The notes under the pieces were generated by a model that saw only the letters and a list, made by a program, of their open reading frames with translations, was not told where the DNA came from and did not search any database. Source: Blastocladiella emersonii ATCC 22665 (taxonomy: Eukaryota > Fungi > Blastocladiomycota). Taken from it: a stretch of DNA of 64,000 nt. This document shows positions 8,840-25,497 of this stretch, one piece after another. Every line of letters starts with the position of its first letter. Position 1 is the first letter of the stretch. Both the position numbers and the translations under genes were made by a program. The stretch covers positions 1,302,001 to 1,366,000 of the forward strand of contig JANHCV010000007.1 of NCBI GenBank assembly GCA_025594325.1, given 5' to 3'.

Positions 8840-11800
8840 ATGACCGAGCACAGCAGGGGAGCCGACTCGCCCGCGTTCGGCGGCGGACCCGGCCTTCCCG
8901 CTGACGGCGGCGGCCACAAGTCGGTCTCGGGCGGCAAGCGCGCCGGCCTCAAGGATGTGATGCGCCCCAACGCCGTCGAGCAGGCCATGTTCTCGGTCGC
9001 CTACATCACGACGCGCGACAACGAGCTCCCGCCGCTCGCCTCATGGTGTCTGACGGTACGATACGCGCGACGGTGGATCCACGCGTGCCGCCCGATCCGC
9101 TCACGCTCGCACCTTGTGTAGATTGTCGAGGACATCCAGTGGCTGGCGTTTTCGTGGCGCTTTATCTCCGACATGCCATGGATCCTCACGGCCATCGTCG
9201 AGCCGACACGCTTCCTGACGACGTACTCGAGCTTCGTCGTCGCGAACTCCATCGGTACGCGTTCCTCCCACCTAGCTTCGAAAACTCGAGACTGATTGAC
9301 ACCTCGCTCGACCGCGTAGGCATCGCGCTGGTCTTCACCGTGGTGGTCCTCATCGCGGCCGTCCTGATCGCCACGCACCGCGAGGCCAAGGTTCCAATTC
9401 CGGCCCTGCGCGTCCTACGCGTGCTAGGTACCCTGCTCATGACGGCGCTCAGCATCCCGATCGCCTCGCTGTTCGTCGGCGGGGTTCACTGCATCGGCGG
9501 CGTGATCCCCGAGTACGGCGTCGCGTGTGCCTCGTCGCAGCATCTCCCGCTCCTCATCTTTGACGCCATCGGCCTTCTCGTGTTCACCCCGCTCATCGTC
9601 GTCGGGTCCCTCGTGGTACGGCTTCGTCGCTATACTGCTGGGCGATTGAAAACTCACTGTCCCACCTGTAGTTCATCGAGACTTCTCCGACAAGCGATAG
9701 CCCGCTGGCCCGGCCGCACGGCCGCATCGACTGCCTCGCTGTGACGATGCGCATCGCGTTCGTGTTCTCCGACTACTTCACGCGCGACCTCGACACCGCG
9801 GGCAAGTGGATCCACCTCGTGCTGGTCGCGGGCGGGCTCGCGTTCCTGGTCGTCAAGATGGCGCGCACGCAGCCCTACTACAACTCGGCCATGACGCACG
9901 CTCGCATCGGTCTCGCCGCGGCCGCTCTCGCCTCGTCGGTTGCGGCCATGGTCATTGTGGGCGCCGGTGAGCCAGCGAGCTGGTGGATTGCGCTGCCCGT
10001 CGCGTCGCTCGTGGGCCTGGTCGTCGGCGTGGCCGGTTCCAAGTGGTACTCGCGCCGGTACCTCGCCGAGACGATCCGGTGCTGGCACCGCGTGGTCCGG
10101 GCCGAGGTCGGCGAGAACGAGGGCTCGCGGCTCGTCGACGGTATGCGGTCGCCGGTGCGGTCGTCCGACCCGTCGGTCGCCAACACGGCCGCGCGCGCGT
10201 CGACCGGTCTCGCCGTCGCGGTGGAAGCGACATGGGATGCTTCGACGTCGACGGGGATCGGGCCGGGCAGCAACATGGGCATCGACGGCGTCAACCATGC
10301 GACGACGAAGGGTAACCAGAACCTCACGCTACACGTCGGCGGTGCCGGCGCGCCGGTACAGCGTCGGCTCAGCGTCGACCGCGGCTCGGTCCACACGGGC
10401 ATGCCGCCGCGGGCCCGTCGGCCAAGCGTGGCGCCGTCCATCATCGAGTCGCTCGCCGCGGCCCAGGACAATGCCGAGTTTACCCTCAACGGTCTGCTCA
10501 AGGGCTCGTCCATGGACGCGCTCAACGTTCTCCGCGAGCGCCAGCCCAAGCGTCGGATCCGCGTGTTTGAGTCCCCGCTGCAGGTCGAAGTCTGTGCGTA
10601 TCGCTCATCACTCCGCCACTTCTAGCGCGAGCACTGACACTCTCTGCATACATTGATAGGCATTCGGTTTATTCGGTCGAACCCGACGGCCAAGCAGATC
10701 TCGCTTGGTCTCCAGCTGCTCGAACGCGGGCTCGTCGAGTTCCCCAACGATCCGCTCCTCCTGCTCCTCTCCGCAACGTACCTCTCGGCCTACTACAAGG
10801 AAGACGGCGCACGTGCCGCCGACGAGCTGATGCGCGAGCTCAACACGTCGCGGCGCAAGATCCCGATGACCGTCGCGTTCCTCGTCTACGTCCGCGAGCG
10901 GTCGGCGCGCGACCAGGGCGAGCACCTCCTCGACCGCGTGTCCATGGCCGCGCTGGCGAAAGAAGTCCGAGGGCATCACCTCGCGGCCCTCTACGGCATT
11001 CGCGACCTGTGGGAGAGCGTCCGCACGTCGGCGCCCGCGCACCAGATCACGGATATCGTCGGCCGCCTCGCCGTGTACCAGGCCGGCGCTGCGAGCTGTT
11101 ACACGCGTCTCCTTGTGATCAACCCGCGCGACAAGAACACGCTGCGCAGCTATGCCCAGTTCCTCCACTGCGTCGAGGCGGACGCGGCTAAGGCGACGCA
11201 GGTCCTCGAGCTCGCCGAAGAGGGTACGCCTTTGCGATGGTCGCATTCGATAGCCACCGAAACTAACCTTACCCTTTTATGTAGTCGAGACGCAGGAATC
11301 GCGCGCTATGACGCAGGAGCACCACCAGAGTCGCGTTGCCACCTCTTCGAGACCGATCAAGGCGACGGCCGCGCTCGAGCCGGCCATGGAGACAACGACG
11401 GTCGCGACCCCGTCGGCCGACAAGCTCGCGACCGTGTCCTCGGTCGAGCTCGACGAGAGCCTGACGCACAGCAACCAGATCATCCTCGACGATCACGTCC
11501 ACGGCGCCGTCGCGCAGTTCAAGAACATGGACCGAGTCAACAACAGCTTCGGCGGCGACGGCAAGTTTGACCTCGTCGCTGACAACACGCGCATGAACGC
11601 CGGCCGCGCCGGGTCGCACACGTCGGGTACCTCGGCCAGTCGGACCCAGCGGCAGGCCCTGCAGATGCGCCGCAGCCTCCTCGAGCGCGTGTCGCGGCCG
11701 CTGAACAGCAACAAGCTCATGGTCATCTCGTGCCTCCTGTTCCTCGGCTCCATCATCATTGGGTTCTACGCGTGCCTGCTCTTCTTCAGCGGCACCTCGA

Positions 11801-13530: not shown

Positions 13531-14159
13531 AGTCGGCTACGCCTAGGCACGAATAGACTTGCCTGATAAGCTGGTGATGACATGATATACGCTGTTCGTT
13601 ACTCCAAGACTCGAAGTGCGCCGAGTGTAACGGCAGCTCTCGTCCGACACATGAAACCCGCGGAACTTAGGCTACACACCACCACCGCCATCGAGTTGCG
13701 CGTCCACGAGCTACGCGTGGTCAACCCCGCATTGCTTTCCACCACATCCGCCAGCATGCCAGCATGCCAGCGCACAATGAACCGAGCGGCAATAACTTTC
13801 GGCATTCGGCAGCCTGGCAGCCTGGCACAGACAACTCGCTGTCGCATCAGCCGTGGACTTGGTCGCTTGATTCGTCTAGCGTTTTCTACTATGACTCTCT
13901 TTACATCTGTGATAAGGTCGATGTGGAAAGCGTTGCTGCATCAGTCAGTTTGCTTCTTTGATACAGCGAGCTCGTTCGCCTCTCATCTCCTCACTGCATC
14001 TCGCAATTTTCGCGAGCAAGGTGGAAGGGCTAATCTGAACACCCGATGCGTCGCGGCGTGCCATGTTTTGCCATCGCGATTGATTCGTTTCCTCACGTCG
14101 CTATGTACGCGCCGCGCCACTCACGTGTGGCGACCTCACGCGCCGCGCCACTAAATCGT

Positions 14160-14168
14160 AGTTGCAGC
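14160..14168 (+). repeat. Left 9-bp target-site duplication AGTTGCAGC
   Basis: Identical to 21505-21513 and directly abuts the TIR. Confidence 0.95.
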
Positions 14169-14185
14169 TAGTCTCGGTGCCAGAC
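14169..14185 (+). repeat. Left terminal inverted repeat TAGTCTCGGTGCCAGAC
   Basis: Exact reverse complement of 21488-21504. Confidence 0.95.
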
Positions 14186-14406
14186 TCCAGGGCAACGTGA
14201 CCTTCGAGGCGTTGTCAAGTCAATCGCCGCCGCGTGACCCGCGGGCGCTCGTTCGGATCGACGGTGCTGGAGTCTGGTTGCAGTTTGCGTGGCGCCACGC
14301 CTCGCCTGTGCTTTCGCGCGCCCGAAACCCCCCCCCCCCCGCGCGCTCTGATCGCGCTCTAGCTCCCCAACCGCCTGACCTATCGCCCTTGGCGTACACT
14401 AATAAA

Positions 14407-17355
14407 ATGGAGTACTCGATGCAACCTATCGATCCATGTCAGTTGCAAGGGGTCAAGTCCCGCGCGGGACTCGCGGGAGTCGCGAGAGATAATTCGGCTA
14501 GGGTCGGGCCCGCTGCGTCGATGCTCGCCCGACTGCCCCGCCCACTTCGCCCGTCTCCTCCCGCTCTCCTACTGCATCATGAAAGTCGAAACGCACTCTA
14601 TCGCACTGCCATGTCAGCTAATGCAATGGAATCCGCGGCGCAGGCCCGACCGGAGGGCCTGCTCCCGCACCATGACCAGATAGTCGAGACCGTCCTCTCG
14701 CTGGGTATCGACGAACCTCGACTCGAGCAGGAGCAGGTTCTCTCGCACCTGCTCGAGGGCCGTAGCGTGGTCCTCACTGCGCGGACCGGGTTCGGCAAGT
14801 CGCTCATCTTCCACGCGATGGCGCAGCTGCTTGATGGAGAGATCGTCGTGGTCTTGTCCCCTTACCGCTCGCTTCTTCGAGATCAGCTGAGTCAGACGCG
14901 CGCGAAGGGCATCGAGGCTGCATCGTTTCACTCGGACGTTGCACCGAGCGACCGTGCGACGTCCCTGGCTCGACTGTTTAATGGTGAGGTCCGGATTGCC
15001 TTCATGACGCCCGAGTACTACGTGAACAGTTTCCGCGCCGCTTGGATCTCGGAGCGACCCGCCACTCGCGTGGGCCTCATCGTCCTTGATGAGGCGCACC
15101 TCTTCGCGATCTGGTACGCAGTCTGAGCCTGCGTTCTCGTCGTTCGGAACGCATCGGCACGATGAACACGATGCTGAACGTTCTTCTCGCTCACTAGGGG
15201 CGATTCTACCTCGCAGTTCCGGCCCGAGTGCAAGCAACTGTTCAAGGCCCGCTCGCTGTTCCCCAATGCGCCTGTACTCATCATGTCGGCCACTCTTGGG
15301 AAAAGCTGGAGCACAACATCACTCGAACTCAGCTTCAGTTTGGCAGTGACGATTACGTGCTTGTTCGCGGTCCGCTTGACCGCCCCGAGATTTACATTCG
15401 TCTCGTCCGCTCCAAGCATGCGACGACCATTCGGGATCCGGGCTCTTACGTATGCGTCTGCGCGACATCGCAACGCATCGCTCATTCACTGACCACTAAG
15501 TCGCGCGTAGCATTACGAGTGGCTGCGCGACTACGTCATGTCTCTCAACCCTGCGAACGCGGCCAGCAAACCGCGCATTCTCGTGTACTTGTACGAACCG
15601 TTACTTGTCGTTGCCTTCTACGGCTACATGTGTGCGCTGAACCCGACCGCGGCCCCGCTTTTCGCGCATTACCACGGCGATCTCAATTCCGCGCACCACG
15701 AATCGGTGTACAACGACATGACAAGCAACGTTGAGCATGTTCAACCGCGAATTCTTTTCTCAACGCACGCGTTTGGCACCGGTGTCCATGTTCCCAACGT
15801 CCGCTGTGTCGTTTCGATCGGTAATACGCCATCCGGGGAGGAGGCGATGCAGATCATGGGCCGCGCAGGCCGCGATGGAAACCCGGCCGAGTTCATCATG
15901 TACTATGCTGCTCGCAGCGCGGCTAGTGCAGCCCCGCCAGCGGTCAGCTCCTCTACTTCAACCAGCAACAAACCGATGGACTTTGTTGTTGACGCCTTCT
16001 TCCAGGGCCATGGCATCGGCGCTCCAAACGAGGACGCCCCGCCACCAAAGAAGCGTCCAAACCTCGAGTCTGAGCCCGCGCATCTTGTCTCTGAGCCCGC
16101 GGATGCAGTTGCCTCTGATCTTGCGGTTTCTGCTCCCGCTCTGCCTCTGGATCTTGAGCAACCTTCTAACTCCAGCGAGAGCTCCCCTGTTTGCGCACGT
16201 TCCGTCTTGCTTGAAATGATCAATGGAGTTCCGTCCAGCGATCATCTTGACCCGAACATTTGCTGCTCGACCCATGGCCATCCGCGCATATCTCCGATTT
16301 ACAACTTCCATGTTGCAAGCGAAGATGCTCTGCATCGCTCGTTCGATTCGCTTCCTCCACCTCCATCATCCGCCCCTGCACCAAAACCAAAGACTCCTCG
16401 TTCTCGAGTGGCTGGGCGAAAGCTCAAGGGGTTGGAATCGCTCCGCCATTTCTTTTCGAGCATCGTTGACCTGACAAACGAGCTTGGCATTGAGTTGTCC
16501 GACTGCAACGGTCTCAACATGTTTAATGTCGCCGACTTTTTGTCGGACAAGGAACTGGAACGGATAACCGCCAATGCGCATGTCCTGGCCGTCGTGAATC
16601 CCGCGTTTGATGCAGATATCCTGACCCGCGACTATTTAACTCCAGATTCTTCGCTTTTCGTACCTGACCATGTGGGACGCCTTCTCGAGCGCATTCGGCT
16701 GGCTTACACCGGGGCGTTGCCCAAGGTCGTGCCTAAGAAGGCCACCAAAAAGGCTGCTACATCACGGCCAACCGAGGTTGCAACAACGCAGCCGACCACG
16801 CGAACGGGCAAGGGCAAGCGGGGAGGCAAAGCCCAGCCTAAAGCGACCCAGGTCGTCGACCGCATGGATGTTGACGATCCGATTGCTCCTGAGCCGCAAC
16901 TATCGGTGCCAGTTCCACTCTCCACGCCGCCGTCACTGTCGCCCGCAGTCTCAAACCCCGCTCCAGCTCCAGGATACGCGCCCCACTTTGCTCCCACGAA
17001 CATCCCGCTTCCTCAAGCTGCACCCTCTGCGACCTGGATTCCTTCTCATGCAGGCACGCTTCCCGCCCATCCGTATCCTCAACAATTCGCAGCTCCCCAT
17101 CCTGCCTCAGCTCCAGCTCCGTATATTTCGGCTAGTTCTGGCTATCCGACGTCTCCCCCGCCAACTCCTCGCTTCCCCGCCATCGACTTTTCGCCCGCAA
17201 TGGCTCGGTACTTGTCCGTCGTGCACGGGATCAACGTTGCTACTCCTCAGCAAACTCCGATCGGCAATACTCAAGCTCAAGCGCCGCCGTTTACGCACGG
17301 CGCTGCCGCGGACCAAGCAACCCAGCACCACCATCCCGCGCCACCTGGCGCGTGA
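14407..17355 (+). CDS. RecQ-like superfamily-2 helicase of the transposon (introns 15114-15197 and 15450-15510; one frameshift near 15298-15304; start may be 14611)
   Basis: Motifs: I ARTGFGKS, II LDEAH, spliced WGD..FRPE, III MSAT, DRPEI, V STHAFGTGVH, VI QIMGRAGRDG, and a Cys cluster CARSVLL...CCSTH. Confidence 0.88.
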
Positions 17356-17559
17356 GCCATGCATCTAGCCCAAATAAAAGGCTTCTATCATCATTTATTC
17401 TTGATTCGTCGAGTTTGAGTTAATTTTTGCGACCGAGTGTCTCGGTTCGTGCGCGTGCGAGACGCGTCGATCAAACACGTGACTGCTGCGAGACACTTCT
17501 CACTTCACTCGCCGAGGCGCGCGCGTCCGCGGAACGATGGAAATTCATATGTATTGCTC
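17356..17559. terminator. A/T-rich region between the convergent helicase and transposase stops (probable polyadenylation signals)
   Basis: AATAAA near 17372 and T-rich runs (tttattcttgatt, gagttaattttt) in an otherwise GC-rich element. Confidence 0.4.
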
Positions 17560-20500
17560 TTAAAATTCGTCGCTATCCTTGTCGAGCCCAGACAACTCGA
17601 TTTCAATGATTTCCTCCTCGGGGTGAGGGAAAGCGAGGAGCTCGTCCGAGTTGGTGCTACTCTGCTCGCCTTGCCCCGCAGCAACAGATGCAAGACTCGA
17701 CCCCGGCATGGGATGCTTCTTCGTCACGTCCGAGTAGTCCCAGAGATCTACCATGAGGCTGGCGTCTCCCATTCGCTGCCGCCCAATGATGCTGAACGCC
17801 TTGACGGTACCATCGTGCATGGGTTTCGGGTCGATAAGGCGCGAATAGATCAGGTCGACAGCCGGAGCACGGGCCTTGTCGCGAGCACGCTTATGGTAAG
17901 CGGACGGTGGAGAAATCGCGCACACGTTGTTGAACGTGGACTCGATGGCCTTAGGCTTGGGCATGGCGTGGACCAAATTGGCCGCACTGTCAAAGGTAAC
18001 GTTCGCGCCTGCGCTCTTGACCCCGATCTTGACAACACGGACGTGTTCCTCGACGTGGTGATCAATCGGGCGACAGGTGCCCGATTCCGATTTGGCGGAA
18101 TGCACAGAGCGGAGGTGAGTGGAGAGCAGGCGGTCGTACTCGGAATAGGCGCCAGCCTGACCACGGAGCTCGCTCATGATGGCGCGCTGGTAAACCTTGT
18201 GGTCCGAGCCAAGAAACGCGGCGAGAAGCGGTCGCTGGAGCCGAACCAGGGCGGGACCGTCGCCAGCGCGCACCGTTTTGCTGAAATCGCGGAGGAGGAG
18301 CGCGGCCTGCAAGAACTCGCCAAGAAAAATGTGTTGCTGGGCACTCGCGGGCATGGGAATGGTTTCCTTGCTCGAGGAGCCGGAACCACGCTTCGACGCG
18401 AGGGGATTATTGCTGTAGAAATGGAGATCGGCGCTAAATGAAAGACGGGACGTTGATTAGTGGGTTCCACGAAAGCTGAAATGCGCGAGCAAGACGTACG
18501 GTGTTTTATAGTACACCCAGTTGGTCATGATCTTGTCGATCACAACAGCAGCATCGTTGACAGAGAGCTTGTACGGGTCCGAGTCAGTCAGACCTCGAGC
18601 ACGCTTGAGCTCGGCAAGCTCAAGCTTGAAGAGCGCACGCAAATGACACTCAAGCTTTCGGGGACGTACAAGCACATGTCAATATCCAACCTGTTCCTAG
18701 TTTCAGCAGCTCAGGGAGGCGTACCAGCTCGTCGATGATCCGCATGCCGGCGTGATACGTAATCTTGGCACGTTTGAGTTCCTTGCGCTGAGTAAGCTGT
18801 TTGTACCACGAGATGGACAGCTGGTCGGTGGGCTCACCCCAGAAGCGGTTCACAATCGCAGCAACGAAGTTGAACATCGTGTGCCAGTCCGAGGTGATGG
18901 GCACAATGGTGCTCAAATCCCCTCCAAAGCCGCAGTACTGTCGAGCGGCCTTTGCGGCCCATTGCATGAGAAAGGTTCCGTCATCACCAAAGATGGGCTG
19001 CGTCGGGTGGCGACCAACGAGTCGCAGCACCTCGTCCAACACGTTGATCATGCCAGACCGCTCGCCTTCGTTCAGGTTAAGAATCTCGACCACGCGGATC
19101 ACAACCGGAAGTGTGACTGCGGGAGCTGTATTGGCGGGAAGCGCAAAGGCAGCGTGGCCAAGAACCCGAGCGTGGCCAAGGTCGGCCGCTGGCCCATCAT
19201 TGCTCGAAATGTAATGCGCAATTTCGCGCCGAGCGCGCTGAAGGCGGGCCGAGCGGTCTGCCGGAGGCTCCAGAATGGCCTTGAGAGAGTAAGTAGGGGA
19301 GCCAGGCGTTCGCATAGCCGGCGTATCGTGTGCGCGAAGCAGGGCATTTCGAAGCGAGAGCTGCTCGGGCGTGAACGCGAAGTCGCACGGCTTTGGGACC
19401 TCAAAGGACAGGACAAGAGTCCAATTGTGCATGACCGAACCGTGAATCGAGGTCGATTCAGATGGAGACTGGTAAACATTGACATTGTCCATGGCAATCA
19501 CGACAAGCGCTTTCGGATCAGCGAGGAGCTTCTTCACCGCGCCCCTGGCGCTCGTGGCCAGTTCAAGTACACATGCGCACGCTGGCCCGACCGCGAGAGA
19601 CGCGTCGGGCAATCACGCGAGTGGCACGCGCCGGCGGCGCCACACTTCCATTCACCGCCGGCGGACTGCCTCGCCGCGGGGTCGCACGCTCACCTCAAGC
19701 GAGCGTCTCCGCTCCCTCTGGTTTTGTTCTAGATCGCTGCTACTATTAGCCGTCGTTATACACCCTTTCCTCCCTTCTGCGTCTACCTCCTTCGCCGTGT
19801 CCATCACCGTCTCCGTCATCTCCTCAGCCTTCCGTGCATCGTGCTCAACCTTCCTCTCGCACCCTGCACCTGTACGCTTCAACTTGGCCGCAAGGTTGAG
19901 GCTCCGATGGTTAGACCAGTCGGACGCTGTAACCTTCAGCTTGTTGAGGATTTTAATGACTGCGCGTGAAGCCCCACTGAGGTAATCGAGCATCATTCCG
20001 AGCGCCAGGTGCAGCGCAGAGGAGTGGCCATGCAGGAGGAAGTTGAGCGTCGTGATAATGAACATGTACGAAAGCATGGCGGGCGTTACGATTGTGGATG
20101 TCCCAGCGCGCTTGGATTGCGCGGGCGGCGAGTCGGACTCGTCCGAATCGAAGGAACTAGCCGATTCGTCAGAAGCTGGCGTCGAAGGGCGAGCCGCTGA
20201 TTGTTTACGCGGAGGGGTGCTGATAGCTTTGAGTATTCTATAAAGCTGAGGGCAGATGTTCGCGCAGCGCTGGGCGATATCGCCCACGTTGAGCGCCTCA
20301 AAGTCGAGCTTTGTGCCAAGCTTCAGGTCGTTGGCGGACGCTTTGTTGAATCGTTCGAGCTCGGCATGAAGAAGCGGGATGGCCTCGGCGACTGGATCGC
20401 GGTCAATGGATGTATCGATCAACTCAAGCAGCTCACCCCACTCGCGAGTAACCGACTCCTTGGTCGCATTTGGAAGGACGGCAAGCTTAGTATTCGCACC

Positions 20501-20839
20501 AGTCGGATCCAGATCCGCACACAAGTCGATGTAGCCCTGGCGAAGGTCATCTGGCGTGAGACGCGCCAAGGCGGCCCTCGCGAGCAACTGACGATCAAGA
20601 GGTTTCCAGGGCGGGTCCCGCGGAATCGGTTGGACCATGCGACGCAAGAACCATCGACGAGGCTCCGAGTCGAGTCGCGTCCGGTCGCCCATCGACTGTA
20701 CAGGGTCAGGGGGACGACCACCGCTCGTTCCACTCCCGGCGGACGGTGCCGCGTCAGACGAGCTTGCCAAAGGGGCGGCCGCCGTCGACCTGCGAGATTT
20801 CTTGGTCATAAATGTCGGTTGCGATAGGTTAGGTTGCAT
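17560..20839 (-). CDS. Academ/DUF6589-type transposase, multi-exon (exon ORFs 19652-20839, 18650-19612, 18457-18675, 17560-18354; first junction uncertain)
   Basis: Motifs IAMDNVN, FGDDGT, SDWHTMF, RFWG, YHAG, TVRAGDG, FLGSDHKVY and SGTCRPIDHHVEEH follow the DUF6589 pattern (DN.N / GD..T / FH / R.GD / D...EH). GTACGC/GTACGT..AG introns join the later exons in frame. Confidence 0.82.
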
Positions 20840-21487
20840 AGCAGCTCACATGGAGGTGCATTCGTGGAGCTATATTGGAGAGAGCGAACGCGGTGGGCGC
20901 CGCGCGACTTGGCCCGCATCACTTCGTCCAACACCAGTCCCCTTGACCGAGGTCGACGCATTCAATGCTCATGAATCAGGAGGAGCTCGGATTCTCATTA
21001 TCCCGCCCAAGGATCGGGCCTTGAGAGTGGGGCGCGAGGCCGCGCGGCTCCTCCCCGCTCAATCATCGCTCCGACCACATATTTTTCACATCCATGGGTG
21101 TCAGAATAAAGCCAGAAGCTTGTTGTACTCACGTATTGCCTTAGTTGTGAAGTTCATGTCGCGGGGAGTGAGGGCGGCGCCGCGAGGGCCCGCGCTCGAG
21201 CGGCTACCACAGGGCCGCGGCCTTCGATCAAGCCTAACTCCTCAGCGGCGCGGAATCAAGGTTTGTGACTGATACGAGCGTGTAGCCCTTGCAGAGACGC
21301 GTCGATTGATATGCATATAAAGCCGATCGGGTAAGGGGTGCGGGAGCAGGAGGTTTAGAGCGCAGATCGCTTCTGGGCCGAGCAAACTGCAACCAGACCG
21401 TACGAGAGACGCGCCGTGCAGGGCGCGGTCATGTGACTCCGGAAACGTGACCCCCACGCGACCGCTCTGGCCAGCTGGATCCGCACG

Positions 21488-21504
21488 GTCTGGCACCGAG
21501 ACTA
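21488..21504 (-). repeat. Right terminal inverted repeat
   Basis: GTCTGGCACCGAGACTA, the exact reverse complement of 14169-14185. Confidence 0.95.
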
Positions 21505-21513
21505 AGTTGCAGC
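21505..21513 (+). repeat. Right 9-bp target-site duplication AGTTGCAGC
   Basis: Identical to 14160-14168. Confidence 0.95.
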
Positions 21514-22064
21514 AGGGCTCGGCAGCACACGGTGCGCCACGTTTACTTGCAGCACCTCACACGTGTGGGTAGCTGGTTCAAGGTTCAAGAACCACGAAAT
21601 GTGTATACCGCCGAAAGGAATCATGATCATGAATGCACAAATCACAGGAAAAAGTCCACAAGCGTCGCAGGGGCCGCGAAACGGATCGCAGTTTGAGGGA
21701 GTGGGAGAATTCTCCCGCTGATTCCACAGTTGATGCCGCGAGTTGTGGCACGGAAAACCGAGCAATTTGTTAGCAAGAAGCACCGCGAGTTTGGTGCGTG
21801 GATGACAGTAAGATAAGTCAAGGCACACGCCCTGGAGTACGAAACACACGGATCGAGCGACGAACAGGACTCAACGCGTCAAGTTGCGACGCGTCCCCCG
21901 TGTAGCGCAACGCGTCTCCAACGAACCCTGACCTTCAAAGCGCAATCTCCACGCGCAGAACAAGTCTTGCCGTACGAGTTTAATGTCTCCCCGGAGATTC
22001 TGTGCGCAGCGTCTCTATTTGTTCAGGACTCTCACATCAAGGATTTGATCAAACTCAATTGTTA

Positions 22065-22634
22065 TTAAGCCGAACAGGCCAATCCTTGCAGCGGGATTGG
22101 TCCATCGAGCCGCTGCCCTTCCTGTGGGACTGGGACATGCGCCATGGCTGTGAGCGGGACCATTCCGATTGCGCCCGTGCGCGTATTCCGACACTGTGCC
22201 CACCAGTCAGTAAACACCTGAAGCAGCACAAACTCGGTGTTGGGGGAGAAAGTGAGCTCGTCGGGCAGATGTCGTGTGAAGTGTTGCATCGCCACCCACG
22301 TCGCGCCAGGGACTGCCGCTGAGGGTAGCGGGCGGTTCTGCGAGGGCAAAATCGAGACCTTCTCAGACTTGATGTGCATAATCGGCACGAATCCGACGGC
22401 GCCATTAACCATGTTTTGGCACCGTGCCCAACCGTCGGCGTGAAGCTCAAGCACGGCAACTTTGTCGTCGCACTTGACAGCCAGCTCGTCGTACGATTGC
22501 GGAACAAAGTCTTCCTTGGCGACCCTTACACTGAGCGCCACGACTGTTGAGGGCAGAGGCCAGACGTTTCGCAAGTACGGAGTGAATGTCGAGGTCGGGA
22601 GAGAGTCCGTTGACGGAATCGGCGTGGACGGCAA
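22065..22634 (-). CDS. Tandem SH3-domain protein (last exon; probably extends to an acceptor near 22677 and has upstream exons)
   Basis: Two SH3 signatures: VAKEDFVPQSYDELAVKCDDKVAVLELHADGWARC...GFVP and VAMQHFTRHLPDELTF...DWWAQC...GMVP. Confidence 0.75.
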   Translation of the reverse strand: MPSTPIPSTDSLPTSTFTPYLRNVWPLPSTVVALSVRVAKEDFVPQSYDELAVKCDDKVAVLELHADGWARCQNMVNGAVGFVPIMHIKSEKVSILPSQNRPLPSAAVPGATWVAMQHFTRHLPDELTFSPNTEFVLLQVFTDWWAQCRNTRTGAIGMVPLTAMAHVPVPQEGQRLDGPIPLQGLACSA

Positions 22635-22977
22635 TTTGCAAAGTGGGCAGACAGCGAATATTTGGGGAAGAGTCGGCTACGGCGGACGAGCAAAAGGCTT
22701 TTATCGCATTCGCAGTCAATGAGTGCGCACAGTAGGTCGGACGTCAGGAAACGTGCATGTGTCCTGTATATCGTGCACTTCACATGTTATCACCGCGCGT
22801 CTCGCATCGCGTCTCGCCCCCGCCAAGCACGCAGGGCATGCTTTCAACATGCGATTCCATGATGCTCAGCAGAAATGACTCGCATGCGCAGCGCGTGACG
22901 ACGCGGAAATCAAATATATATGTAACGGCGGCGAGCCCAGAAATCCGCGCCGGTCAGAACACTCTTCCTTCCACTGC

Positions 22978-24276
22978 TCAGCAATGTCGCGCACGAATCC
23001 GCGCAGCGAACTCGTGCTCATTGCGAGCAAGCGCCGTGTCAAGGATGGCACTCCACCTCTTTTGAGCGACGAGTCCACAAGATTCGAGCAGCTCGAGGTG
23101 CTCAATGTGAAGATCGCCGCCAAACCATCGCTTGATCAGAAACCCGAGCTGATTTAACTCGTAGCTTGTGTACCCACCTCCCCAGCGGTGGAGCCGAATG
23201 TCCTTAAAGACATCATCGAAATCGAGAACGGGCACGACCTGATCGGGAAACTGCGAGAGTAGTGGCATAAAAGCTTTGTGTCCCACGAGCGCAGCCGCGT
23301 GGACGTATCGCTTGCACAGTCTGGCCGACATGTTTGGATGGTGCGAGAAAGCCCACTCGAAGATGCCCTTGGCGCTCTCGGCCATGTCGATGAACGTCGA
23401 ATACTCTGTGGCGCGTTGAAGAGCCAGAGTTGCTGTCGTGTCGTCGCTCAAGAGTTTCGCAAGCACCGTTTCATCGACGCCGTACTGAGGATTGCTGCAC
23501 AGAATCCGGAAGATCGCGCCACGCCACTCCAAGATTACATAGAAGGCGAGCAGCTCGACGAATCGCAGGGGCGCCTCGGGAACGATGGTGCCCTCGTGCT
23601 CGGAACCCAGGTTGTACAGATGGTTGAAGAGCGGGAGCCACTCGGCAGGCGTTAGTGAGACAAGTAAAAGCTGCCGAGCCTGAACGGCGACGACGTCGAG
23701 AAGTTGACACAGGGCGTCCGACCAGCACCCAAGGACGGCGGCGACAAGCAGCCAGGCAAGCGTGGAGAGCGGACACGTCCAGATTGACGTGTACTGCTGA
23801 GACCGAGCTGCTTCCACCCGTTCGCGGAGGGCCTGCGCGTTGATATCGCTTGGTCGAATGCGACGAGATAATAGTTTGACCACGTTTACAAGAGCCGTCG
23901 TCGGTGCCGGCCTGCGATAGTAGCGCATCCGGGCAGACATGGCCGCTTTCTCCGCCCCTGCAGGGTTTAGGTCCACCCAAAGGAGACGCGTGACGGCATC
24001 CAGATCTCGAGTATTCGCGCGCGTTGAGCGAGGAACAGTCGCAATCAGCCGCTCGACAAGGACAAGGGACCAGGAAATGCAGACTTCTTCGTGGAGATCC
24101 AAGACATGCAGTGAGGCCGAGCAAGCCGCGACGGCTGCGCGCGGCGAAGCGAGTCGAAGCACGGCGCTAACCAATTCCGCGGGGAGCCGAGCGATCGCGC
24201 GGCTGTATGCATCATCTTCATCCCGTTGCATCAAGTGTTTGTGTTCCATGGTGGCGTTGGTGGCGATAACTTGCAT
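22978..24276 (-). CDS. Orphan 432-aa helical protein with an F-box-like N-terminal motif
   Basis: Long uninterrupted ORF. IARLPAELVSAVLRLA resembles the F-box L..LP.E consensus. No other family was recognised. Confidence 0.55.
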   Translation of the reverse strand: MQVIATNATMEHKHLMQRDEDDAYSRAIARLPAELVSAVLRLASPRAAVAACSASLHVLDLHEEVCISWSLVLVERLIATVPRSTRANTRDLDAVTRLLWVDLNPAGAEKAAMSARMRYYRRPAPTTALVNVVKLLSRRIRPSDINAQALRERVEAARSQQYTSIWTCPLSTLAWLLVAAVLGCWSDALCQLLDVVAVQARQLLLVSLTPAEWLPLFNHLYNLGSEHEGTIVPEAPLRFVELLAFYVILEWRGAIFRILCSNPQYGVDETVLAKLLSDDTTATLALQRATEYSTFIDMAESAKGIFEWAFSHHPNMSARLCKRYVHAAALVGHKAFMPLLSQFPDQVVPVLDFDDVFKDIRLHRWGGGYTSYELNQLGFLIKRWFGGDLHIEHLELLESCGLVAQKRWSAILDTALARNEHEFAARIRARHC

Positions 24277-25497
24277 CGGGGGAGGAGCGTGGTCGCAAAG
24301 AGACTCGACTCACCAGACGCGCGACTTTGCGCACCACAAGCGCACGTGTCGCCACATAGTGACTCGACGCGCCGTCGCCCGAGTCCCAGCCGTTTTTGCT
24401 CACGACGGACCAAACCGAGCCGCCAACGTTGTAAGACGTGACGACATGAACCGCGAGAGGGCTTAGACGTCCCTCATGGATGCGACCAGCGGAAATGGTG
24501 CTCAAGTTGGGGTCCCGACGAGGATGAACATTATTTCTTGCCACCCACCGTGACGCCGTACCCTTGAGAAGTGTTCCACGGCACTGCCGGCCCTAAGCAG
24601 CGCATCGGGGTGACCGCGATAGATAGCGACCGCGTCGTGAAAACACGTGACGGGCGAAATGTCTCTTGTCTCGCAGCGCAGATCGCCCAGCCACCCGACC
24701 CGTTTCGGCTCTCGCCCATCTGCTCCCCCGACGTCACTTCCGTGCACTGCGCTCTGCTGCCACGGCCCACCCCTCCCTTGTGCTGCGCTGCCCCCGTTCT
24801 CTCTTCCATCGTCGAGTGCCCTCACCCTACGAAGCGACGAACGCAGCCAAGTGAAGGGCCCCTCCACCACGCACGCAGACGACGACGGCGGACGGTCCCA
24901 CCTGCTACCCCCACGAAACCGTTCTCCCTCGCATCGTCGCACGCACGCACGCACTCAGCCGGCCATCGCAAGCTAGGTGCGCATCACCTGCATCTCTCGC
25001 ACTCGGCGCAGCGGCGGCGGCGGCCAGGATGGAGCGCAGGCGAAGCGATTCCAGTCCACGGCAGCGGCGGCGCTGAGCAGGCCGTGGGCCTGCTTCGGGC
25101 TGCGCCGCCGCCCTGCCCTCACGGCCCACGAGCGCAGCTGCTCGAGCATGTTCATCGGCCGCACCCGGATGTTGGCCAACGTGGGTGGCGGCGGCGGGCG
25201 ACCTCGGGCGTGGGGCAGCAGGCAGGTGAGAAGGAAAAACCTTGCGTGCGCACGCACGTCGCAACGCCTCTCGACCCTCGCCGCCGCCGCCGAGCCGCCG
25301 CGTGCGCTGGTCGCCGGGGCACACCTTCCGTTGCTCTCCCGGCCGCCGCCCCCGCCCGCTTGCCGCTTGCCCGTCCTATCGTCATGCTAACCTCTCCCTC
25401 TCTCTCCTCCCCTCCACAACATCCGACCCTGTAGCAAACCTTGCACTTGTTGCACAACGCATCAACACCCCACACTCCACCCCACTAGCACTACGAG

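What the first reader, a model, noticed from the sequence alone, without database searches (positions are those of the whole stretch)
14160..21513. Complete, apparently young AcademH (helicase-carrying) transposon in a zoosporic fungus
Seen: perfect 17-bp TIRs beginning TAG, a perfect 9-bp TSD (AGTTGCAGC) and two convergent spliced genes, a RecQ-like SF2 helicase and a DUF6589-pattern transposase. Known: Academ elements encoding a RecQ-like helicase (AcademH) have been described from animals and some fungi, with ~9-bp TSDs. Inference: unmutated TIRs and TSD suggest a recent insertion. As far as I recall, no such element has been characterised from Blastocladiomycota, and the helicase's role in transposition is unresolved. 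Candidate catalytic residues are D in AMDNVN, D in FGDDGT and E in DHHVEEH.
Basis: partly seen in the sequence, partly recalled or inferred. Interest (0 to 1): 0.82.

Follow-up and report, generated by a model that had tools for sequence, protein, structure and literature searches.

The report
Young helicase-carrying transposon, genes broken
A 7.3-kb cut-and-paste jumping gene that carries a transposase and a RecQ-like helicase sits here with perfect ends in a zoosporic fungus, but this copy has both genes damaged, while near-identical copies elsewhere in the genome look intact, so it is a new family of a known, little-studied transposon type.

Summary
There are perfect 17-bp TIRs (14169-14185 / 21488-21504) and an exact 9-bp TSD (AGTTGCAGC). 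Two convergent spliced genes lie inside: a RecQ-like SF2 helicase and a Pfam DUF6589 transposase.

"Complete" is only partly right. In this copy the helicase has a -1 frameshift in an A-run at 15301-15304. The transposase is split by a nested 325-bp dispersed repeat (19555-19884, 5-bp TSD TGGCC) that brings two in-frame stops.

Short-read contigs of the same sample carry the extra A and lack the 330 bp. They differ from the window by about 0.2% and are about 2.5-4 times as deep as the flank. The family is therefore young and multi-copy, with apparently open genes in other copies.

The only detectable transposase relative among 1.84 billion representatives is Allomyces macrogynus AMAG_20110. 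Its locus has the same convergent helicase and a homologous terminus.

The architecture and TSD length fit AcademH. Direct comparison with Academ reference transposases was not possible.

The scan found another copy of this family before, on another piece of the same genome. I call this a new member of a known kind, of moderate interest.

The parts
14160..14168 (.). Left target site duplication, AGTTGCAGC
   Evidence: identical to 21505-21513 and found nowhere else in the window
14169..14185 (+). Left terminal inverted repeat, TAGTCTCGGTGCCAGAC
   Evidence: (I5). The terminal TAGTCTCG...CCAGAC is conserved in Allomyces L001 8427-8443
14267..14293 (+). Left subterminal motif. CTGGAGTCTGG is an inverted copy of the inner part of the TIR (14180-14190) and is followed by TTGCAGTTTGC. 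Probable second transposase-binding site (inferred)
   Evidence: (I2)
14611..15113 (+). Helicase exon 1: start codon chosen at the first ATG before motif I; Walker A GFGKS; DEAH box
15114..15197 (+). Helicase intron 1, 84 nt, GTACGC...CTCAC..TAG (predicted; no RNA evidence)
   Evidence: The model is collinear with the Allomyces helicase across the junction
15198..15449 (+). Helicase exon 2. It carries a -1 frameshift in this copy in the run GGGAAAA (15298-15304). Other copies have five A
   Evidence: (A put in behind 15300 in X1-X3 contigs)
15450..15510 (+). Helicase intron 2, 61 nt, GTATGC...CTGAC...TAG (predicted)
15511..17355 (+). Helicase exon 3: Helicase_C with QIMGRAGRDG, then a long proline-rich tail. 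The stop codon is at 17353-17355
17461..17495 (.). Short dispersed repeat between the 3' ends of the two genes
   Evidence: loose ends on both sides, raised depth; D5, D6
17560..18433 (-). Transposase exon 3: holds DHHVEEH with candidate catalytic E775. The stop codon is at 17560-17562
18434..18499 (-). Transposase intron 2, 66 nt, GTACGT...ACTAAT...TAG (predicted)
18500..18654 (-). Transposase exon 2
   Evidence: collinear with P0001
18655..18724 (-). Transposase intron 1, 70 nt, GTACGC...AAAG (predicted)
18725..19554 (-). Transposase exon 1, distal part: AMDNVN (D341) and FGDDGT (D509); DUF6589 match
19555..19884 (.). Nested insertion: a 325-bp dispersed repeat plus one copy of its 5-bp TSD, TGGCC (the second copy is at 19885-19889). 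It has imperfect TIRs, AGTTCAAG..TACA / TGTACGCTTCAACT. It brings two in-frame stops (codons starting at 19654 and 19615, - strand)
   Evidence: (the contigs skip it; its depth is 3-6 times that of the element; many loose ends at 19884)
19885..20839 (-). Transposase exon 1, proximal part (N-terminal 318 residues, no Pfam match)
21377..21404 (-). Right subterminal motif: the mirror image of 14267-14293, with an inverted copy of the inner part of the TIR
   Evidence: (I2)
21488..21504 (-). Right terminal inverted repeat
21505..21513 (.). Right target site duplication, AGTTGCAGC

Best explanation
This is one copy of a young, low-copy family of cut-and-paste DNA transposons of the AcademH type.

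The family's working form, inferred from the other copies, is about 7.0 kb and has three features:
- A 937-residue DDE-type transposase of Pfam family DUF6589, with candidate triad D341, D509 and E775.
- A convergent 866-residue RecQ-like SF2 helicase with all ATPase motifs.
- Ends built of a 17-bp TIR plus an inverted copy of its inner part about 90 bp further in.

Inferred mechanism: the transposase binds the terminal and subterminal sites, excises the element, and joins it to target DNA cut with a 9-nt stagger. Repair of the stagger gives the 9-bp duplication. The helicase is assumed to help at a DNA-unwinding or repair step. Its role is not known for any AcademH element.

This particular copy inserted recently into an intergenic site. 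Since then it has been disabled twice: by loss of one A in an A-run of the helicase, and by insertion of a 325-bp dispersed repeat into the transposase. With perfect ends it could still be moved by a transposase supplied from an intact copy.

Shown: the ends, the TSD, the genes, both lesions, the multi-copy state, and the relative in Allomyces.
Inferred: the catalytic residues, the binding sites, the mechanism, and the equation of DUF6589 with the Academ transposase.
For: Ends and TSD.

Domains. The helicase's best solved relatives are all RecQ family.

Gene models: once the two lesions are taken out, both genes read open, at 866 and 937 codons. The spliced transposase model aligns collinearly with Allomyces AMAG_20110 over 353 residues, E 2e-25. 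The Allomyces DNA aligns without a gap across the 330-bp joint, so the segment is an insertion.

Reads:
- Contigs of X1-X3 carry the extra A behind 15300 and skip 19555-19884.
- The skipped segment is flanked by TGGCC on both sides and is 3-6 times deeper than the element.
- Element depth against the junction contig is 23.4/9.33 in X1 and 145.9/36.4 in X2.
- About 11 fixed differences in 5.4 kb, a mix of missense and silent.

Allomyces locus L001: a DUF6589 gene and a convergent DEAD helicase, and a terminus TAGTCTCGAACCCAGAC with the same subterminal GGTCTGGTT..CA..TTTGC block.

Literature: AcademH makes 9-10 bp TSDs (PMC10045372). AcademH carries DEAD and Helicase_C domains and is known as a low-copy element in three fungal phyla (PMC10799480).

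Atlas: DUF6589 clusters occur in fungi and invertebrate animals. Their nearest non-family folds are transposases (UPF0236, ZBED RNase-like, MULE), at TM 0.29-0.36 by the query model and up to 0.43 by the matched model.

Against: - No Academ or AcademH reference protein could be compared, so superfamily membership rests on architecture, TSD length and the taxon range of DUF6589.
- No other copy could be fetched as DNA. Copy number comes from contig word depth, which the tool itself warns is not a copy number.
- The contigs come from one sample, probably the one the genome was assembled from.
- No RNA run was listed, so all four introns are predictions.
- The frameshift lies in a homopolymer, where assemblies err. 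Only one noisy contig (X4) shows the window's version.
Confidence: 0.78

Rival explanations
1. It is a mobile TIR element with a DUF6589 transposase and a RecQ-like helicase, but DUF6589 is not the Academ transposase. The family would then belong to another superfamily or a new one, for example a distant Mutator-like lineage, which also makes 9-bp duplications, that picked up a helicase.
For: No direct comparison with Academ references was possible. MULE transposases are among the weak structural neighbours of a DUF6589 model. The protein is very isolated in sequence: one hit among 1.84 billion representatives and none in three word-indexed searches.
Against: No Pfam MULE or other transposase family matched at E up to 0.1. 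The combination of helicase, 9-bp TSD and TIRs is the published hallmark of AcademH (PMC10045372, PMC10799480). The taxon range of DUF6589 (Basidiomycota, Mucoromycota, Cnidaria, Mollusca, Arthropoda) matches 'animals and fungi'.
Confidence: 0.12
2. This copy is autonomous after all. The missing A would be a homopolymer error of the assembly, and the 330-bp segment would be removed from the mRNA by splicing.
For: The frameshift is in an A-run, and the main contigs of three runs show five A. Several in-frame GT..AG combinations span both stops, one of them 333 nt long and starting inside the insert's terminus.
Against: A contig of run X4 carries the window's alleles at both 15035 and 15300. A 75-nt contig at single-copy depth carries the window's left insert junction. 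None of the candidate introns has the GTAYGY donor, the nearby CTRAY branch site or the 61-84 nt length of the element's four credible introns. The segment is a dispersed repeat with its own TSD.
Confidence: 0.08
3. It is not a transposon. The inverted and direct repeats would be chance or an assembly artefact around two ordinary host genes.
For: None beyond the fact that no empty site could be examined.
Against: The joint chance expectation is about 2e-6. The multi-copy depth begins at the predicted terminus. The terminus is conserved in Allomyces. Third-position GC (GC3) is 0.63-0.68 against about 0.9 in the host's long ORFs. A second copy sits at another site.
Confidence: 0.01

Closest known systems
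AcademH (helicase-encoding lineage of the Academ superfamily; Kojima 2020, Mobile DNA 11:15, cited in PMC10045372 and PMC10799480)
   Same: TIR element with a DDE-type transposase and a separate SF2 DEAD/Helicase_C helicase. The TSD is 9 bp. It is low-copy and occurs in fungi.
   Different: The host phylum is Blastocladiomycota. The papers I could read name Basidiomycota, Ascomycota and Mucoromycota. Sequence similarity to the reference AcademH transposases was not measured. The termini are bipartite and conserved across two genera.
Allomyces macrogynus locus around AMAG_20110 (GG745366.1, L001)
   Same: The transposase is 27-33% identical over more than 350 residues, with the same DN.NVY, F.D.G, SDWH and VE..VR motifs. 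There is a convergent RecQ-like helicase. One terminus reads TAGTCTCG...CCAGAC and has the same subterminal block.
   Different: The locus is decayed. The annotated gene lacks the first catalytic region, the helicase survives in pieces, no second terminus was found within 3 mismatches, and no TSD could be defined.
AcademX (Academ lineage with XPG nuclease)
   Same: Presumed to share the transposase superfamily.
   Different: AcademX makes 3-4 bp TSDs and encodes a nuclease, not a helicase (PMC10045372). Here the TSD is 9 bp and no nuclease domain was found.
Mutator-like elements (MULE)
   Same: 9-bp TSD and TIRs. MULE folds are weak structural neighbours of DUF6589.
   Different: No MULE, DBD_Tnp_Mut or SWIM Pfam match. 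MULEs do not normally encode a helicase.
KolobokH and Helitron (other helicase-carrying fungal transposons, PMC10799480)
   Same: They carry a helicase.
   Different: By established knowledge of those families, Kolobok duplicates TTAA, and Helitrons have no TIRs or TSD and carry a Rep-Pif1 protein. Here the TSD is 9 bp and not TTAA, the TIRs are perfect, the helicase is RecQ-like and there is no Rep.

Membership tests
AcademH | Transposase homologous to Academ DDE transposases | tested here: inconclusive
   The Pfam DUF6589 match is above the gathering score, and the D, D, E candidates are conserved with Allomyces. No Academ reference sequence or profile was reachable. A structure model of the core failed, with pLDDT 34.
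AcademH | A superfamily II helicase encoded in the same element | tested here: met
   DEAD 1.2e-18 and Helicase_C 1e-9. The best solved relatives are RecQ, WRN and RECQ4. The gene lies inside the TIRs. The pairing with the DUF6589 gene recurs in Allomyces.
AcademH | Target site duplication of 9 or 10 bp | tested here: met
   Exact 9-bp AGTTGCAGC on both sides. The criterion is from PMC10045372.
AcademH | Terminal inverted repeats bounding the unit that is repeated in the genome | tested here: met
   17/17 TIR. The multi-copy contigs start at 14172-14176.
Mutator-like elements | MULE-type transposase domain (PF10551 and relatives) | tested here: not met
   No such Pfam match at E up to 0.1 on any piece.
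Kolobok (KolobokH) | TTAA target site duplication | tested here: not met
   The TSD is 9 bp, AGTTGCAGC.
Helitron | Rep (HUH) plus Pif1-type helicase, no TIRs, no TSD | tested here: not met
   TIRs and a TSD are present. The helicase is RecQ-like. There is no Helitron_like_N or PIF1 match.

The most novel reading that the evidence does not exclude
At least one fully intact, currently active master copy of this family exists in the genome. Its ends are conserved across two genera of Blastocladiales, which marks the transposase-binding sites. Together with the naturally helicase-dead and transposase-dead copy described here, it would be a tractable system for asking what the helicase does in AcademH transposition.
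Probability: 0.4. Interest if true: 0.55.

Novelty: new member of a known kind. Interest (0 to 1): 0.4.

Why it matters
AcademH is one of the least studied DNA transposon groups. No member has been shown to transpose, and the job of its helicase is unknown.

This family offers several things for experiment:
- Exact ends and near-identical copies.
- A natural pair of knock-out lesions beside apparently open copies.
- Termini conserved between Blastocladiella and Allomyces, which gives concrete sequences to test.

It extends the group to an early-diverging fungal phylum that a survey described as having very few DNA transposons, if any (PMC5751038). It also gives a likely function to the DUF6589 'unknown' family in that lineage.

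It is not a new kind of element, and the scan had already met the family on another contig.

Tried and rejected
- Word-indexed protein searches found nothing beyond self. I tried the transposase core, Allomyces P0001 and the helicase ORF.
- The exhaustive representative search gave a single hit.
- A metagenome scan with a two-sequence alignment gave no relative.
- AlphaFold2 on the 276-residue transposase core without an alignment gave pLDDT 33.8. It was not used for any fold search.
- A MAFFT alignment of exon pieces to P0001 misplaced exon 3 and was discarded.
- No RNA run was listed.
- Kojima 2020 and Yuan & Wessler 2011 are not held. Supplements of two papers had nothing on Academ, and DUF6589/PF20231 is not linked to any transposon in the library.
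- Short helicase exon-2 pieces are too short for PDB sequence search.
- No second terminus or TSD could be defined for the Allomyces element.
- There is no other copy of the element or of the nested repeat in this window.
- There is no tRNA near the target.
- I considered reading the 330-bp segment as an intron and rejected it. No offset gives GT..AG. The segment has its own 5-bp TSD and high depth. The Allomyces homologue is continuous across the site.
Full report
**1. The observation**

The window holds TAGTCTCGGTGCCAGAC at 14169-14185. Its exact reverse complement is at 21488-21504. No other match exists, even with three mismatches.

Immediately outside both arms lies AGTTGCAGC (14160-14168 and 21505-21513). 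This 9-mer occurs nowhere else in the window. The repeat cannot be extended to 10 bp on either side.

From the window's base composition, about 0.22 perfect 17-bp inverted repeats within 10 kb are expected. A matching 9-mer beside one has probability about 1e-5.

Short-read contigs of four public DNA runs reproduce the left junction over 14100-14196 without a difference. All four runs are from one sample, probably the sequenced strain. The higher-depth contig of the element starts at 14172-14176, so the repeated unit begins at the predicted terminus. The element is 7,336 bp, or 7,354 bp with both TSD copies.

**2. The helicase gene (+ strand)**

Pfam finds DEAD (1.2e-18) and Helicase_C (1e-9). 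The two halves find only RecQ-family proteins among solved structures: E. coli RecQ, WRN, RECQ4, RECQ1, RECQ5 and BLM. The Atlas neighbours agree.

Reading the DNA gives three exons: 14611-15113, 15198-15449 and 15511-17355. They are separated by introns of 84 and 61 nt with GTACGC and GTATGC donors and CTCAC/CTGAC branch-like sites.

Inside exon 2 the frame slips by one base at GGGAAAA (15298-15304). No intron can fit there. Another note of the scan on this window (s1-256597) had flagged the same run.

The main contigs of runs X1-X3 have one more A at this place. With that base the gene reads open for 866 codons, and motifs I (GFGKS), II (DEAH), III (SAT) and VI (QIMGRAGRDG) are intact. The Allomyces helicase aligns in one frame across the site: model residues 166-249.

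A contig of run X4 carries the window's alleles at both 15035 and 15300. The frameshifted version is therefore present in reads. That contig is noisy, however, and a homopolymer error in the assembly is not fully excluded.

**3. The transposase gene (- strand)**

DUF6589 matches two stretches, at 41.6 and 21 bits against a gathering score of 27. The reading frame from 20839 runs into two stops, at 19654 and 19615.

The read contigs skip exactly 19555-19884, which is 330 nt. TGGCC stands at 19555-19559 and again at 19885-19889. The skipped segment has the following properties:
- Its depth is 3-6 times that of the rest of the element.
- Many contigs run out of it into unrelated sequence at 19884.
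- Another contig enters it at 19559.
- It has imperfect inverted ends, AGTTCAAG..TACA / TGTACGCTTCAACT.
- No offset of the 330 nt gives GT..AG on the coding strand.

The Allomyces homologue aligns without a gap across the joint: LNKLKV...NLAATSARG...AMDNVNVY against LNALGV...AVDNINVY. The segment is therefore a nested insertion of a 325-bp dispersed repeat with a 5-bp TSD, not an intron.

With the segment removed, and with two short introns (18724-18655, GTACGC donor; 18499-18434, GTACGT donor), the gene reads open for 937 codons. It then aligns collinearly with Allomyces AMAG_20110 over 353 residues at E 2e-25. That alignment supports both exon junctions.

Many GT..AG pairs could in principle bridge the two stops in frame. 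None resembles the element's four credible introns. No RNA run was listed to test this.

**4. Catalytic candidates**

- AMDNVN against AVDNIN.
- FGDDG against FADQG.
- DHHVEEHVR against DLLVERYVR.

The conserved residues are D341, D509 and E775. In the other copies of this genome codon 510 is GGC (Gly), so the second D of FGDD is dispensable. [quoted passage not shown]

A structure model of the core without an alignment failed, at pLDDT 34. The Atlas shows that a modelled DUF6589 representative has bacterial UPF0236 transposases, ZBED RNase-like domains and MULE transposases as its nearest folds outside its own family. The TM-scores are low: 0.29-0.36 by the query model and up to 0.43 by the matched model. 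This is a lead towards an RNase-H-like transposase fold, not proof of one.

**5. A young, multi-copy family**

Relative to the contig that bridges the left junction, the element's contigs are 2.5 times as deep in X1 (23.4 against 9.33) and 4.0 times in X2 (145.9 against 36.4). The tool warns that contig word depth is not a copy number.

The contigs differ from the window at about 11 sites in 5.4 kb, or about 0.2%. Further sites differ between runs, so more than one other sequence variant exists. The coding differences are a mix of missense and silent changes, as expected for copies drifting without selection.

In the contigs the helicase is open throughout. The transposase is open over the part that was laid (codons about 281-937).

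A 75-nt contig carrying the window's left junction of the nested repeat has single-copy depth (9.05). It has only 25 nt on one side, short of the tool's 31-nt bridging rule.

Earlier notes of this scan report a 7,339-letter copy on another piece of the same genome. They name the organism as Blastocladiella emersonii, which I did not verify. They place that copy at a different, palindromic target, also with both genes broken. I could not fetch that DNA. I therefore cannot say whether it shares the lesions seen here, although its length suggests it may carry an insert of similar size.

**6. Relatives**

Among 1.84 billion representative proteins, the transposase core finds one protein: AMAG_20110 of Allomyces macrogynus, annotated only as DUF6589.

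Its locus has a DEAD-helicase remnant in convergent orientation. The remnant is collinear with the helicase here at 31-44% identity.

About 400 bp upstream of the inferred start of the transposase gene, the locus has TAGTCTCGAACCCAGAC. After 65 nt this is followed by an inverted GGGTCTGG and then TTCCA...TTTGC.

Aligned with both ends of the present element, the blocks TAGTCTCG, CCAGAC, GGTCTGGTT and TTTGC..GGC are invariant. Within each end here, the inner part of the TIR is repeated in inverted orientation 76-77 nt further in. Conservation across genera argues that these are the transposase's binding sites. That is an inference.

The Allomyces copy is decayed. No second end or TSD could be found.

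**7. Classification**

Published statements I could read:
- AcademH makes 9 or 10 bp TSDs and AcademX 3 or 4 bp (PMC10045372).
- AcademH carries DEAD and Helicase_C domains and is a low-copy element of Basidiomycota, Ascomycota and Mucoromycota (PMC10799480).

The element meets the helicase, TSD and TIR criteria. The criterion that matters most is homology of the transposase to Academ references. I could not test it, because the defining papers and Repbase are not available here and nothing in the library links DUF6589 to a transposon.

The taxon range of DUF6589 clusters fits 'animals and fungi' (Basidiomycota, Mucoromycota, Cnidaria, Mollusca, Arthropoda). Mutator-like, KolobokH and Helitron readings each fail a defining feature: no MULE domain, a TSD that is not TTAA, and the presence of TIRs and a TSD with a RecQ-like rather than Pif1 helicase.

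I put the AcademH assignment at about 0.8.

**8. Composition and site**

The element has 58.9% GC against 67.7% for the rest of the window. Its genes have third-position GC (GC3) of 0.63-0.68. Long host ORFs in the window have about 0.89-0.93. The genes are therefore not adapted to the host's codon usage.

The insertion lies between a membrane-protein gene and a double-SH3 gene. It disrupts no recognisable ORF.

**9. Verdict**

This is a recently inserted, doubly disabled copy of a young AcademH-like family whose other copies appear open.

It is a new member of a known kind, already met once by this scan on other DNA. Its value lies in offering defined ends and natural mutants for a transposon group whose mechanism is untested.

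Noticed in passing
window 19560-19884: A 325-bp dispersed repeat (62% GC) with imperfect inverted ends and a 5-bp TSD (TGGCC), nested in the transposase gene. In read contigs it is several times more abundant than the transposon and has many different flanks. It has no other copy in this window, and its family is unknown.
   Followed up: partly
window 17461-17495 (also 19592-19623 and 21403-21420): A motif of about 35 bp containing CGAGAGACGCG (with an ACGCGT core) lies between the two genes' 3' ends. It recurs in the nested repeat and near the right end. Read contigs leave it into several unrelated sequences, so it is dispersed in the genome. One contig joins 14127 to 19594 through it.
   Followed up: no
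window 14161-14167, 14277-14283, 21387-21393, 21506-21512: The 9-bp target duplication shares the 7-mer GTTGCAG with the element's own subterminal motif at both ends. The 7-mer is not over-represented in the window (10 found, 9 expected). The coincidence is post hoc and unexplained; it may be a hint of target preference.
   Followed up: partly
window 18979-18981 (transposase codon 510): Copies of the family differ at the second D of FGDDGT: Asp here, Gly in the read contigs. The first D is the one conserved with Allomyces.
   Followed up: yes
window 21514-24300: The low-GC stretch (57-59%) continues for about 2.5 kb beyond the right end of the transposon. It includes a 432-residue ORF (22978-24276, - strand) with no Pfam match. 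It may be older mobile DNA or an accessory region.
   Followed up: partly
L001 8427-8530 and 9719-14574 (Allomyces macrogynus GG745366.1): An unannotated, decayed relative of the element: one recognisable terminus, a DUF6589 gene whose annotated model misses the first catalytic region (which lies upstream at 9719-9865), and a fragmented convergent RecQ-like helicase.
   Followed up: partly
run X4, loose ends at window 15403, 16086, 19842: Contigs of this run end in loxP-like sequence (ATAACTTCGTATAATGTA). This is most likely a library adaptor of a mate-pair type and therefore a technical feature, not part of the genome.
   Followed up: no
window 14328-14340: A poly-C run in the helicase's upstream region varies in length between the window and the read contigs (one C more in one run, two fewer in another).
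   Followed up: no
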